Assembly: GCF_001194135.2 (NCBI RefSeq)
Contig: NC_069003.1
Coordinates: 33,317,637-33,381,636, forward strand
DNA: 64,000 nucleotides
Source: Octopus bimaculoides
Lineage: Eukaryota
Direction: 5' to 3'
Every line of letters begins with the position of its first letter. The first letter of the stretch is position 1. The notes under the pieces are model-generated. The model was not told the origin of the DNA. It saw only the letters and a list, made by a program, of their open reading frames with translations, and did no database searches. A program made the position numbers and the translations under genes. Positions 372 through 56,075 of this stretch are shown here, piece by piece.

Positions 372-479
372 TGTGTTGCATACATCATTAACGGGCAAGA
401 ATGTCAGTAAAGGCGTCATGACTACTTATGATGCAACAGGAAAATCAGTTTTTGGATCCTACAAACTGTCCACAGTAAG
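372..479 (+). CDS. Exon 1 in window: middle of first SRCR-like domain
   Basis: ttacaag acceptor, aag|gtgagt donor. The only open frame reads [35 protein letters not shown], and its phase 2 end matches exon 2. Confidence 0.65.

Positions 480-56075: not shown

What the first reader, a model, noticed from the sequence alone, without database searches (positions are those of the whole stretch)
372..56075. Giant dual-protease mosaic: SRCR-protease-LDLa-MAM-22 LDLa-SRCR-protease, with both triads intact
Seen: 41 exons splice in frame into more than 2,000 aa with two complete H57/D102/S195 triads. Between them lie a MAM domain, 23 LDLa modules and mucin-like spacers. Known: Drosophila Nudel has two protease domains among LDLa repeats, but its second is catalytically defective and it has about half as many LDLa repeats. 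Enteropeptidase has LDLa, MAM and SRCR but one protease. Inference: this is an expanded molluscan nudel/TMPRSS-like scaffold-protease with two possibly active heads on a long ligand-binding tether, perhaps an extracellular proteolytic platform in egg coat, reproductive or immune tissue. I do not recognise a characterised protein with this architecture.
Basis: partly seen in the sequence, partly recalled or inferred. Interest (0 to 1): 0.8.

Follow-up and report, generated by a model that had tools for sequence, protein, structure and literature searches.

The report
Two-headed mosaic serine protease gene, octopus
The window holds most of one very large Octopus bimaculoides gene for a mosaic serine protease with two apparently active protease domains joined by a long chain of binding modules; it is real and unusual, but public databases already hold the same predicted protein from Octopus vulgaris and similar ones from other invertebrate phyla, none studied functionally.

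Summary
I rebuilt the gene independently: 41 AG/GT exons on the + strand (372-56075), 2,038 aa, one stop at 56073-56075. Pfam finds Trypsin twice, MAM, SRCR_2 and 22 LDLa modules. A 23rd LDLa is degenerate and the first SRCR is only a C-terminal fragment. Both protease domains keep H57/D102/S195, G193, D194 and the core disulfides.

The window is identical to O. bimaculoides CM046623.1. It corresponds to residues 1172-3279 of a 3,279-aa O. vulgaris model (A0AA36BSI6, 91% identical).

The finding contains 12 assembly gaps, not 6, and all lie in introns of the model.

The same layout (SRCR-protease-LDLa-MAM...LDLa(n)-SRCR-protease) is predicted in an annelid, a bryozoan and a nemertean. In all of these the activation-site P1 residue is Phe/Tyr rather than Arg, and residue 189 is not Asp.

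It is best read as a two-headed, probably type II membrane-anchored protease: enteropeptidase/MALRD1-like at the front and corin-like at the back. It is not a Nudel orthologue. The O. vulgaris orthologue was detected in skin mucus.

One transcript carrying both heads is supported but not proven. The architecture is uncharacterised but already present in databases. Interest is moderate.

The parts
372..479 (+). Exon SRCR1b: C-terminal part of the SRCR_2-like domain before protease 1. This is the first exon inside the window; the gene continues upstream.
   Evidence: AG/GT exon, phases 1/2. 88.6% identical to O. vulgaris P0001 residues 1172-1206. Same phases as SRCR2b.
942..979 (+). Exon SRCR1c ([12 protein letters not shown]).
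   Evidence: AG/GT, phases 1/1, parallel to SRCR2c. Present in the O. vulgaris orthologue.
1123..1297 (+). Exon P1a: propeptide Cys, activation site SHY|IQYG, and His57 (ITAEHC).
2679..2941 (+). Exon P1b: Asp102 (DIALLLL).
4154..4284 (+). Exon P1c: ends ...NMPSCY (residue 189 = Pro, Cys191).
   Evidence: Acceptor corrected; residues read.
4965..5124 (+). Exon P1d: GDSGGP (Ser195). It ends in a phase-1 donor, not a stop.
5591..5698 (+). Exon L1: degenerate six-Cys LDLa module.
   Evidence: Local HMM 9.5e-5. Pfam 15.1 bits, below the 24.1 cutoff.
6083..6229 (+). Exon MAMa.
   Evidence: Pfam MAM 5.8e-16 over both MAM exons; splice sites.
7086..7448 (+). Exon MAMb.
8546..8668 (+). Exon L2 (LDLa).
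11992..12129 (+). Exon L3 (LDLa).
16480..16614 (+). Exon L4 (LDLa).
21967..22101 (+). Exon L5 (LDLa).
22716..22847 (+). Exon L6 (LDLa).
24876..25064 (+). Exon L7 (LDLa plus Thr-rich linker).
25788..25934 (+). Exon L8 (LDLa).
26124..26270 (+). Exon L9 (LDLa).
26958..27104 (+). Exon L10 (LDLa).
27747..27914 (+). Exon L11 (LDLa).
29084..29557 (+). Exon L12 (LDLa plus a 121-aa Ser/Thr/Pro-rich mucin-like spacer, 48% S+T+P).
29761..29904 (+). Exon L13 (LDLa).
30403..30549 (+). Exon L14 (LDLa).
32129..32272 (+). Exon L15 (LDLa).
34106..34258 (+). Exon L16 (LDLa).
34614..34745 (+). Exon L17 (LDLa).
35102..35128 (+). 27-nt mini-exon (IPTSEETPS) leading into the Fz domain.
   Evidence: Matches O. vulgaris IPASEETPS.
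35881..36548 (.). Assembly gap that most likely hides the exon(s) for the N-terminal 79 aa of the Frizzled (Fz) domain.
   Evidence: The O. vulgaris orthologue has 79 extra residues exactly between the mini-exon and exon FzC. They are not found in any readable part of the window. Pfam Fz 6.9e-15 on the O. vulgaris segment.
36817..36927 (+). Exon FzC: C-terminal third of the Fz domain ([27 protein letters not shown]...).
37103..37485 (.). Assembly gap that may hide a 39-nt exon (VSTNSHSPGTSKP in O. vulgaris and O. sinensis).
38404..38517 (+). Exon L18 (LDLa).
39748..39858 (+). Exon L19 (LDLa).
40038..40145 (+). Exon L20 (LDLa).
40962..41069 (+). Exon L21 (LDLa).
42029..42136 (+). Exon L22 (LDLa).
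42456..42533 (+). Thr-rich mucin-like exon ([25 protein letters not shown]); probably a cassette exon.
   Evidence: Present in the O. bimaculoides and O. sinensis RefSeq models and absent from the O. vulgaris 3,279-aa model.
43602..43715 (+). Exon L23 (LDLa).
44351..44486 (+). Exon SRCR2a.
   Evidence: Pfam SRCR_2 8e-10 over SRCR2a-c; splice sites.
45273..45383 (+). Exon SRCR2b.
45959..46005 (+). Exon SRCR2c.
46882..47062 (+). Exon P2a: propeptide Cys, activation site QKF|IIGG, and His57 (TAAHC).
47388..47677 (+). Exon P2b: Asp102 (DIALLHL).
48233..48378 (+). Exon P2c: ends ...SSITGCY (residue 189 = Thr).
55896..56075 (+). Exon P2d: GDSGGA (Ser195) and the stop codon at 56073-56075. It follows a 7.5-kb intron with three gaps.

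Best explanation
Identity (shown). Window 372-56075 is the 3' two-thirds of one large Octopus bimaculoides gene. It is the orthologue of O. vulgaris OCTVUL_1B024954 (A0AA36BSI6, 3,279-aa model).

Architecture. The gene encodes a mosaic S1A serine protease with two protease domains on one chain. Using the orthologue to fill in what the window lacks, the order is: [upstream: LDLa, about 5-6 MAM (four found by my local scan), LDLa, SRCR, 2 LDLa] - SRCR_2 - protease 1 - degenerate LDLa - MAM - 16 LDLa with mucin-like spacers - Frizzled domain - 5 LDLa - Thr-rich spacer - LDLa - SRCR_2 - protease 2 - stop. In a related cephalopod transcript and in the annelid homologue the N-terminus is a cytoplasmic tail, a signal-anchor TM helix and a SEA domain. 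The octopus protein is therefore most likely a type II transmembrane serine protease (inferred).

Catalytic state (sequence shown, activity inferred). Both heads keep the catalytic triad, the oxyanion-hole Gly193, Asp194, the conserved disulfides, and the propeptide Cys plus Cys122 that tether an activated head to the preceding chain.

Mechanism (inferred). Each head is made as a zymogen and is activated by cleavage after an aromatic residue (Y|IQYG and F|IIGG), not after Arg/Lys. Neither S1 pocket has Asp189 (Pro in head 1, Thr in head 2), so specificity should be chymotrypsin- or elastase-like rather than trypsin-like. That would fit the aromatic activation sites and makes auto-activation or reciprocal activation of the two heads plausible. 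After cleavage the three chains would stay disulfide-linked. The 22 LDLa modules, whose core sequences end in a conserved acidic pair (DE, once EE) as in the canonical DxSDE calcium-binding motif, together with MAM and Fz, would serve as a long ligand- or substrate-recruiting tether at an epithelial or mucus surface.
For: - Gene model: 41 AG/GT exons, a single stop, and identity to RefSeq from L4 onward.
- Source: the window equals O. bimaculoides CM046623.1.
- Orthologue: 91.2% identity over 2,010 aligned residues to O. vulgaris P0049 residues 1172-3279, collinear throughout. That annotation was built with Iso-Seq, RNA-seq, PASA and EVM, and its authors state that it is less fragmented than NCBI-style models (PMC10700109).
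- Conserved layout: the order SRCR-TRYP-LDLa-MAM...LDLa(n)-SRCR-TRYP appears in single predicted proteins of Owenia (annelid), Watersipora (bryozoan) and Tubulanus (nemertean, three heads).
- Internal position of head 1: cephalopod transcript contigs carry protease 1 followed in frame by LDLa-MAM-LDLa....
- Catalytic and structural residues are intact in both heads and in all spiralian homologues. Residue 15 is F/Y in all of them and residue 189 is never Asp.
- Selection: protease 2 is the most conserved region between the two octopus species (98.0%). Protease 1 is 87.3%.
- Shared origin: the SRCR-protease units share identical intron positions and phases.
- Closest solved structure: both heads match the enteropeptidase light chain best, followed for head 2 by other TTSPs such as matriptase, TMPRSS13 and hepsin.
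- Other domains: Fz 6.9e-15 and SEA 3.2e-15 in relatives.
- Protein-level evidence: the O. vulgaris 3,279-aa entry was identified in skin mucus with 23 peptides and 38 PSMs. It was about 2.5-fold lower in senescent animals (PMC11431876 supplement).
Against: - No single transcript or protein molecule spanning both heads was seen here.
- NCBI models of O. bimaculoides and O. sinensis split the locus. The upstream model ends by read-through after L2 at 8673. XP_052831918.1 starts at an out-of-frame ATG inside L3. The O. sinensis model starts just before L4.
- In another cephalopod, transcript contigs read from four sequencing runs (nine contigs on record) end with a stop and about 1-1.4 kb of 3' sequence right after L3. 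That encodes a single-headed isoform.
- The one mucus peptide I could place on the O. vulgaris protein lies in the N-terminal MAM region. Six predicted tryptic peptides (four from the C-terminal half, two from protease 1) were not found in the truncated stored tables.
- The TM/SEA N-terminus is not shown for any octopus model.
- The activation sites are non-canonical, and head 1 also has Tyr at positions 18 and 192. Activity is inferred from sequence only.
Confidence: 0.72

Rival explanations
1. The locus yields mainly single-headed products. Alternative last exons, polyadenylation or an internal promoter would split it into an N-terminal membrane-anchored protease (ending after L2/L3 or in the Fz region) and a separate corin-like LDLa-Fz-LDLa-SRCR-protease product. 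The two-headed chain would be rare or only an annotation construct.
For: - A cephalopod transcript (P0006; contigs read from four sequencing runs, nine contigs on record) ends with a stop and an AT-rich 3' region of about 1-1.4 kb directly after L3. The junction CCAG|GAAGCACATGA has no GT, so it looks like an alternative last exon rather than a retained intron.
- O. vulgaris has a second annotated isoform that ends inside the Fz domain (P0001).
- RefSeq models in two octopus species start at L3/L4.
Against: - The split points differ between species and annotations: after L2, inside L3, before L4.
- The RefSeq starts look like artefacts. One is an out-of-frame ATG inside the L3 exon, rescued by a donor 28 nt downstream. 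The other reads intronic polypyrimidine sequence as coding.
- A C-terminal product starting at L4 would have no signal peptide or anchor.
- Another cephalopod transcript runs on through L2-L6.
- The Iso-Seq-informed O. vulgaris annotation has the full 3,279-aa form.
- Three other phyla predict both heads in one protein.
Confidence: 0.2
2. One or both heads are not working proteases. The aromatic activation sites might never be cleaved, or head 1 (IQYG N-terminus, Tyr192, Pro189) might be a pseudo-enzyme. The protein would then act mainly as a giant LDLa/MAM/Fz scaffold or receptor.
For: - The activation motif is non-canonical: no Arg/Lys at residue 15 in either head.
- Head 1 has Gly18->Tyr and Tyr192.
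- Head 1 is less conserved than head 2 (87.3% against 98.0%).
- The annelid head 2 has Glu at position 193 and the bryozoan head 2 lacks the Cys42-Cys58 disulfide.
Against: - The triad, Gly193, Asp194 and Ile/Val16 are retained in every cephalopod copy of both heads. The triad is retained in all 13 spiralian domains examined.
- The ant Nudel-like second domain shows what real decay looks like: His57->Ser, Asp102->Glu, and truncation.
- Head 2 is the most conserved part of the protein.
Confidence: 0.15
3. It is the molluscan orthologue of Drosophila Nudel and works in egg-coat or perivitelline proteolytic signalling.
For: - There are two S1 domains with LDLa modules between them.
- Pfam PF09342 (DUF1986/'Nudel') scores just above its cutoff in both heads.
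- An ant 'nudel-like' protein appears among the hits (1.7e-43).
Against: - Nudel-like has no MAM, SRCR or Fz, has 11 LDLa, and its second head is degenerate.
- In the NJ tree the ant Nudel-like head groups with Drosophila Corin (72%), not with the octopus heads.
- PF09342 also hits ovochymase, TMPRSS9 and PRSS33, so it is not diagnostic.
- Nudel-like has Arg15 and Asp189, whereas these heads have F/Y and P/T.
- The orthologue was found in skin mucus.
Confidence: 0.04
4. The two-headed arrangement is an assembly artefact: a mis-join across N gaps of two unrelated loci in the fragmented O. bimaculoides assembly.
For: There are 12 gaps inside the gene, and every exon between the heads is phase 1-1. 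Any mis-join would still read in frame.
Against: The O. vulgaris model from an independent assembly is collinear with the window across all 12 gaps, with only the two expected omissions. The annelid, bryozoan and nemertean proteins have the same order.
Confidence: 0.02

Closest known systems
[quoted passage not shown]
   Same: It is the orthologue: 91.2% identical, collinear, with both heads, MAM, the LDLa array, Fz and SRCR_2.
   Different: It comes from another species. It contains the Fz exon(s) and the 13-aa exon that are hidden in the window's gaps, and it skips the Thr-rich exon at 42456-42533. It is only an automatic annotation with no functional study.
Predicted spiralian homologues (Owenia fusiformis P0004, Watersipora subatra P0007, Tubulanus polymorphus P0003)
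   Same: - The module order is the same: SRCR-protease-LDLa-MAM...LDLa(n)-SRCR-protease.
- The triads are intact, residue 15 is F/Y and residue 189 is not Asp.
- Owenia shows TM, SEA and Fz.
   Different: - They have fewer LDLa between the heads (about 9-10) and more MAM-LDLa alternations.
- Fz is near the N-terminus in Owenia.
- Tubulanus has three heads.
- Protease identity to octopus is 27-37%.
Corin (atrial natriuretic peptide-converting enzyme), the RefSeq name of the C-terminal half
   Same: It is a type II TM protease with Fz, LDLa repeats and SRCR, then a C-terminal S1A domain. The window's Fz-6 LDLa-SRCR_2-protease 2 part follows that order.
   Different: Corin has one head, two Fz and 7-8 LDLa, an Arg|ILGG activation site and Asp189. 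Here there is one Fz, the site is Phe|IIGG, and residue 189 is Thr.
Enteropeptidase (TMPRSS15)
   Same: It has SEA, LDLa, MAM, SRCR and an S1A head. It is the best solved-structure match for both heads (3.6e-32 and 4.6e-38).
   Different: It has one head and CUB domains (none here), only two LDLa, a Lys/Arg|IVGG site and Asp189.
Drosophila Nudel (represented here by Formica 'nudel-like' P0031)
   Same: It is a very large extracellular protein with two S1 domains interspersed with LDLa repeats.
   Different: - It has no MAM, SRCR or Fz, and 11 LDLa.
- Its second head is catalytically dead.
- It has Arg15 and Asp189.
- It does not group with the octopus heads.
Polyserase-1 (TMPRSS9) and ovochymases (from my own knowledge of the families; the ovochymase residues are)
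   Same: They carry several S1A domains on one polypeptide. Polyserase-1 is a type II TM protein.
   Different: Their heads are adjacent or separated by CUB domains, not by a stalk of more than 1,400 aa made of LDLa, MAM and Fz modules. They have Arg at the activation sites.
[quoted passage not shown]
   Same: It has alternating MAM and LDLa modules, as in the N-terminal part of the orthologue. This is the source of the automatic name.
   Different: MALRD1 has no protease domain.

Membership tests
S1A (chymotrypsin-fold) serine proteases | Trypsin-domain profile match plus His57, Asp102 and Ser195 | tested here: met
   Pfam Trypsin 9e-44 and 1e-40. H/D/S are present in both heads, together with Gly193, Asp194, Cys42-58 and Cys191-220.
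Type II transmembrane serine proteases (TTSP) | N-terminal cytoplasmic tail and signal-anchor TM helix | tested here: inconclusive
   The 5' end lies outside the window, and the octopus models begin without a TM. A TM (CCTIFGIILLMCGIIAGIVVAIYF) and SEA (3.2e-15) are present in cephalopod transcript P0006 and in Owenia P0004. A search for an octopus N-terminus found only a 239-aa fragment from an unidentified source.
Type II transmembrane serine proteases (TTSP) | Stem of SEA, LDLa, SRCR, MAM or Fz modules, ending in a C-terminal S1A domain tethered through a propeptide Cys-Cys122 disulfide | tested here: met
   Domain map. The CG...[FY]|I motif and Cys122 are present in both heads. The disulfide itself is inferred.
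Type II transmembrane serine proteases (TTSP) | Activation by cleavage after Arg/Lys (R/K|IVGG) | tested here: not met
   Residue 15 is Tyr (head 1) and Phe (head 2). It is F/Y in all 13 spiralian domains examined.
Nudel | Two S1 domains separated and flanked by LDLa repeats | tested here: met
Nudel | Second protease domain lacks catalytic residues | tested here: not met
   Octopus head 2 has H/D/S. Formica nudel-like head 2 has Ser57 and Glu102 and is truncated.
Nudel | Protease domains group with Nudel in a phylogeny | tested here: not met
   In the NJ tree (200 bootstraps) Formica Nudel-like head 1 groups with Drosophila Corin (72%). The octopus heads fall in weakly supported spiralian groups. 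The tree is weak, so this is 'no support' rather than exclusion.
Nudel | Pfam PF09342 (DUF1986 / 'Nudel') match | tested here: inconclusive
   Scores are 25.7 and 35.1 bits against a cutoff of 25.2. The same family is recorded for ovochymases, TMPRSS9 and PRSS33, so it is not diagnostic.
Corin | Fz-LDLa(n)-Fz-LDLa(n)-SRCR-protease | tested here: not met
   There is only one Fz (seen in the orthologue; the window retains its last third). It is followed by 6 LDLa, SRCR_2 and a protease, and it is preceded by a whole extra protease unit.
Corin | Trypsin-like head (Arg15 activation, Asp189) | tested here: not met
   Phe15 and Thr189 in head 2. Bufo and Drosophila corin have Arg15 and Asp189.
Enteropeptidase | SEA-LDLa-CUB-MAM-CUB-LDLa-SRCR-protease | tested here: not met
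   No CUB was found in the window model or listed for the cephalopod orthologues. The catalytic domains are nevertheless the best PDB matches.
LDL-receptor class A module | Six Cys and an acidic DxSDE-type calcium-binding cluster | tested here: met
   Pfam finds 22 stretches (4e-187 overall). The core sequences listed end in DE (EE in L17) before the last Cys. L1 is sub-threshold.

The most novel reading that the evidence does not exclude
A conserved spiralian family of two-headed (sometimes three-headed) membrane proteases forms a self-contained zymogen cascade on one polypeptide. Every head has an aromatic P1 residue at its activation site and a non-acidic S1 pocket. One head could therefore cleave and activate the other (or itself) without any external trypsin-like convertase. 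The LDLa, MAM and Fz tether would position substrates at a mucosal surface. Cephalopods would have expanded the tether to 22 LDLa and could tune the output through isoforms that drop the second head.
Probability: 0.2. Interest if true: 0.6.

Novelty: new variant of a known kind. Interest (0 to 1): 0.42.

Why it matters
If the two-headed chain is made and both heads are active, this would be an uncharacterised, phylum-spanning class of mosaic membrane protease. It combines an enteropeptidase/MALRD1-like front with a corin-like back. Its activation logic (aromatic P1, no Asp189) differs from every characterised TTSP, from Nudel and from the polyserases. That gives a concrete system for asking how multi-protease polypeptides are activated and why they persist.

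Practical consequences:
- The O. bimaculoides and O. sinensis RefSeq entries ('atrial natriuretic peptide-converting enzyme', 'LRP2-like') are fragments of this gene and are misnamed.
- Two assembly gaps hide coding exons, including most of a Frizzled domain.
- The orthologue is a detectable component of octopus skin mucus that drops in senescent animals.

Tried and rejected
- A six-frame Pfam scan of the whole window would have used too many capped calls. I used local HMMs and tblastn instead.
- My first acceptor for exon P1c (4178) produced an in-frame stop. I corrected it to 4154.
- The look-up of encoding contigs on the O. vulgaris protein P0001 returned 'not on record'.
- The second homologue search (SRCR2 + protease 2) returned only generic trypsin-domain proteins. 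It missed even the octopus cluster, because the cluster representative lacks the C-terminus. It therefore says nothing about cephalopod transcripts of head 2.
- The third search (TM-SEA region of the cephalopod transcript) found only a 239-aa fragment from an unidentified source. The octopus N-terminus remains unrecovered.
- Six predicted tryptic peptides (four from the C-terminal half, two from protease 1) were searched in the skin-mucus supplement and not found. The stored tables are truncated, so this is uninformative.
- blastn of the cephalopod 3' UTR against the window found no homologous alternative last exon.
- The bacterial promoter/terminator scan downstream of the stop is irrelevant to a eukaryote.
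- tRNA and Rfam scans found nothing.
- The NJ phylogeny has weak deep support (4-55%). It does not establish when the heads duplicated.
- Literature searches found no paper describing this architecture. They returned only proteome or transcriptome lists that use the automatic names.
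Full report
**1. What is in the sequence**

The window has 16 runs of N. Twelve lie inside 372-56075; the scan's program listed only six.

All coding signals are on the + strand. LDLa and trypsin motifs occur only there. A local LDLa HMM built from the window's own copies finds 23 modules on the + strand (E 9.5e-5 to 4e-20) and nothing below E 0.1 on the - strand. tblastn with bovine trypsin locates two sets of His57, Asp102 and Ser195 exons.

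Every LDLa and MAM exon is bounded by an AG acceptor with two leading bases and a GT donor with one trailing base. These are phase 1-1 exons.

I assembled the exons by hand. This gave first a 38-exon model. Three small exons revealed by database models brought it to 41 exons, 6,118 nt and 2,038 aa, with one stop at 56073-56075.

Pfam on the pieces gives:
- Trypsin, 9e-44 and 1e-40.
- MAM, 5.8e-16.
- SRCR_2, 8e-10 (second copy).
- 22 Ldl_recept_a stretches.

The module at 5591-5698 has six cysteines but scores only 15.1 bits against a cutoff of 24.1. The 'SRCR' before protease 1 is only the last ~47 aa of such a domain. Its exons (372-479, 942-979) have the same phases as the last two exons of the second SRCR. 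The rest lies upstream of the window.

**2. Where it comes from and what the gaps hide**

The best database hit is an O. vulgaris protein. Its 90% cluster contains four relevant entries:
- a 3,279-aa O. vulgaris isoform (CAI9739539.1 / A0AA36BSI6);
- O. bimaculoides XP_052831918.1, named 'atrial natriuretic peptide-converting enzyme', 1,497 aa;
- O. sinensis XP_036368544.1, named 'LRP2-like', 1,566 aa;
- an older 1,333-aa entry without a name or stated species.

From exon L4 to the stop my model is identical to XP_052831918.1. The window is base-for-base identical to GCA_001194135.2 CM046623.1 at an offset of 2,027 nt from locus L005.

A global alignment to the 3,279-aa O. vulgaris protein gives 91.2% identity over 2,010 positions. 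It starts at residue 1172 and is collinear across all 12 gaps.

Only two segments are missing from the window:
- 79 aa (DSCIPLTIKECQGLGY...KHICD), exactly between the 27-nt mini-exon (35102-35128) and exon 36817-36927. This is where gap 35881-36548 lies.
- 13 aa (VSTNSHSPGTSKP), where gap 37103-37485 lies.

The 79 aa plus the following exon form a Frizzled cysteine-rich domain (Pfam Fz 6.9e-15). No readable part of the window encodes the missing piece.

So ten gaps are purely intronic and two hide coding exons. Both hidden pieces are multiples of three, which preserves phase 1-1. Because the 28 exons between the heads are all phase 1-1, the in-frame reading alone could not have shown continuity. 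The collinear orthologue does.

**3. The two heads**

I aligned the domains to bovine chymotrypsinogen numbering. Both octopus domains have His57, Asp102, Ser195, Gly193, Asp194, Cys42-Cys58, Cys191-Cys220 and Cys122. A 'CG' propeptide cysteine precedes each activation site.

The activation sites are SHY|IQYG (head 1) and QKF|IIGG (head 2). Residue 189 is Pro in head 1 and Thr in head 2, and both heads have Tyr192.

The two SRCR-protease units share all intron positions and phases, including the unusual ...SCY|GDSGG junction. They are only 30% identical. This points to an old internal duplication.

Between O. bimaculoides and O. vulgaris the per-region identities are:

| Region | Identity |
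|---|---|
| Head 2 | 98.0% |
| SRCR2 | 97.0% |
| LDLa arrays | 93-95% |
| Head 1 | 87.3% |
| MAM | 74.7% |

Head 2 is the most conserved region of the protein. In the PDB both heads match the enteropeptidase light chain best (3.6e-32 and 4.6e-38). For head 2 the next matches are other TTSPs such as matriptase, TMPRSS13 and hepsin; for head 1 they are plasma kallikrein, factor XI and TMPRSS2.

**4. Relatives**

A local domain map of the hits shows the same order in single predicted proteins from three other phyla:
- Owenia fusiformis: Fz-L-MAM-3L-SRCR-TRYP-L-MAM-...-10L-SRCR-TRYP, with TM and SEA.
- Watersipora subatra: ...SRCR-TRYP-L-MAM-(L-MAM)3-9L-SRCR-TRYP.
- Tubulanus polymorphus: three SRCR-TRYP units.

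All 13 spiralian domains examined keep the triad, have Phe/Tyr at residue 15, and lack Asp189. Corin, enteropeptidase, ovochymase and an ant Nudel-like head 1 have Arg15. All of these except the third ovochymase domain also have Asp189.

The ant Nudel-like protein is L3-TRYP-L4-TRYP-L4 without MAM, SRCR or Fz. Its second head is dead (Ser57, Glu102, truncated).

An NJ tree groups head-2 domains together and head-1 domains together, but support is weak (22-55%). It places the Nudel-like head with Drosophila Corin at 72%. The Pfam 'Nudel'/DUF1986 match is marginal and is also recorded for ovochymases, TMPRSS9 and PRSS33.

I therefore do not file this protein under Nudel. Its front resembles enteropeptidase/MALRD1 and its back resembles corin, and it fails defining features of each (see the membership table).

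**5. One gene or two?**

For one gene:
- The O. vulgaris annotation used Iso-Seq, RNA-seq, PASA and EVM. Its authors note that it is less fragmented than the O. sinensis annotation (PMC10700109). It contains the full two-headed model and a shorter isoform ending in the Fz region.
- The architecture is conserved across four phyla.
- Cephalopod transcript contigs show head 1 followed in frame by LDLa-MAM-LDLa. One of them continues through five LDLa before running into a retained intron (GTTAGT).
- The NCBI split points look like artefacts and disagree with each other. The upstream O. bimaculoides model ends by read-through after L2 (stop at 8671-8673). XP_052831918.1 starts at an out-of-frame ATG at 12028 inside exon L3 and regains frame through a donor at 12157. 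The O. sinensis model reads the L4 polypyrimidine tract as coding.

Against one gene:
- No single molecule spanning both heads was seen here.
- In another cephalopod (48% identical), transcript contigs read from four sequencing runs (nine contigs on record) encode TM-SEA-mucin-L-MAMx5-L-SRCR-2L-head 1-L-MAM-2L. They then end with GST-stop and about 1-1.4 kb of AT-rich 3' sequence. The junction has no GT, as expected for an alternative last exon.

Single-headed isoforms are therefore likely to exist alongside the long form. I put about 0.7 on the two-headed chain being a real product in octopus.

**6. Likely function**

Shown:
- domain content, intact catalytic residues and conservation;
- a type II TM anchor and SEA in relatives;
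- detection of the O. vulgaris 3,279-aa entry in skin mucus, with 23 peptides, 38 PSMs and 7% coverage. The abundance ratios are aquarium/senescent 2.51 and wild/senescent 2.62, with adjusted p 0.020 and 0.003 (PMC11431876 supplement).

Inferred:
- Each head is a zymogen cleaved after an aromatic residue.
- The cleaved chains stay disulfide-linked through Cys122.
- Without Asp189 the heads prefer non-basic P1 residues. They could then activate themselves or each other.
- The LDLa modules, whose core sequences end in a conserved DE or EE pair before the last cysteine, together with MAM, Fz and the O-glycosylatable Ser/Thr/Pro spacers (48-60% S+T+P), form a long tether that recruits ligands or substrates at an epithelial or mucus surface.

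**7. Novelty and verdict**

The protein is not characterised in any paper I could find. It is, however, already present as predicted proteins under uninformative automatic names, in O. vulgaris and in three other phyla. Multi-headed mosaic S1A proteases are a known kind (Nudel, polyserase-1, ovochymase).

The distinctive points are:
- the two intact heads separated by a stalk of more than 1,400 aa;
- the enteropeptidase-like and corin-like halves on one chain;
- the family-wide aromatic activation sites.

I rate it a new variant of a known kind, of moderate interest.

Noticed in passing
window 49931-55730 (last intron, 48379-55895): About 5.8 kb of degenerate (TTCG)n microsatellite is interrupted by three N gaps, and one block is in the opposite orientation (ACGA, 53954-55161). 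It creates long spurious ORFs of up to 309 aa on both strands ([12 protein letters not shown]...).
   Followed up: partly
window 8671-8673, 12028-12157 and 16480: Public O. bimaculoides gene models fragment this gene. The upstream model (545 aa) ends by read-through after exon L2. XP_052831918.1 ('atrial natriuretic peptide-converting enzyme') starts at an out-of-frame ATG inside exon L3 and regains frame through a donor 28 nt downstream of the one that keeps the LDLa frame. The names 'corin' and, for O. sinensis, 'LRP2-like' are misleading.
   Followed up: yes
window 42456-42533: The Thr-rich 78-nt exon is present in the O. bimaculoides and O. sinensis RefSeq models but skipped in the O. vulgaris 3,279-aa model. 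It is probably a cassette exon that changes the O-glycosylated spacer before the last LDLa.
   Followed up: partly
loci L001-L004 (Logan transcript contigs, unidentified cephalopod), ORF end about 6887 in L001: A single-headed isoform (TM-SEA-...-protease 1-LDLa-MAM-2 LDLa) ends with GST-stop and about 1-1.4 kb of AT-rich 3' sequence right after the module equivalent to L3. It was read in contigs from four sequencing runs (nine contigs on record). No similar sequence was found in the octopus L3-L4 intron.
   Followed up: partly
window 5790-5979 (+) and 43067-43330 (-); also 48427-48615 (+) and about 39000-39125 (+): Interspersed-repeat fragments sit in introns. Two copies share a ...KQHS[TS]H[DG]F[RW]KH[LF]FTLR[IV][TA]EA... 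peptide, which looks like the tail of a retroelement ORF. Two further copies share ...[14 protein letters not shown][GS]YSRRHLPK[VM]PRSGTEP... I did not classify them.
   Followed up: no
protein P0003 (Tubulanus polymorphus), domains at 304-544, 1397-1627 and 2004-2255: The nemertean homologue has three SRCR-protease units, all with intact triads and Tyr at the activation site. The number of heads therefore varies within the family.
   Followed up: partly
proteins P0004 (Owenia) head 2 and P0007 (Watersipora) head 2: Owenia head 2 has Glu instead of Gly193, the oxyanion hole residue. Watersipora head 2 lacks the Cys42-Cys58 disulfide (Gly and Leu instead). The second head may therefore be less constrained outside cephalopods.
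   Followed up: no
window 1-75 and many introns (e.g. 280-312, 575-625, 4400-4460, 36549-36700): Microsatellites are abundant: (CAT)n at the window start, and (GT)n or (CA)n tracts. Several of them flank the N gaps, which probably explains the assembly breaks.
   Followed up: no
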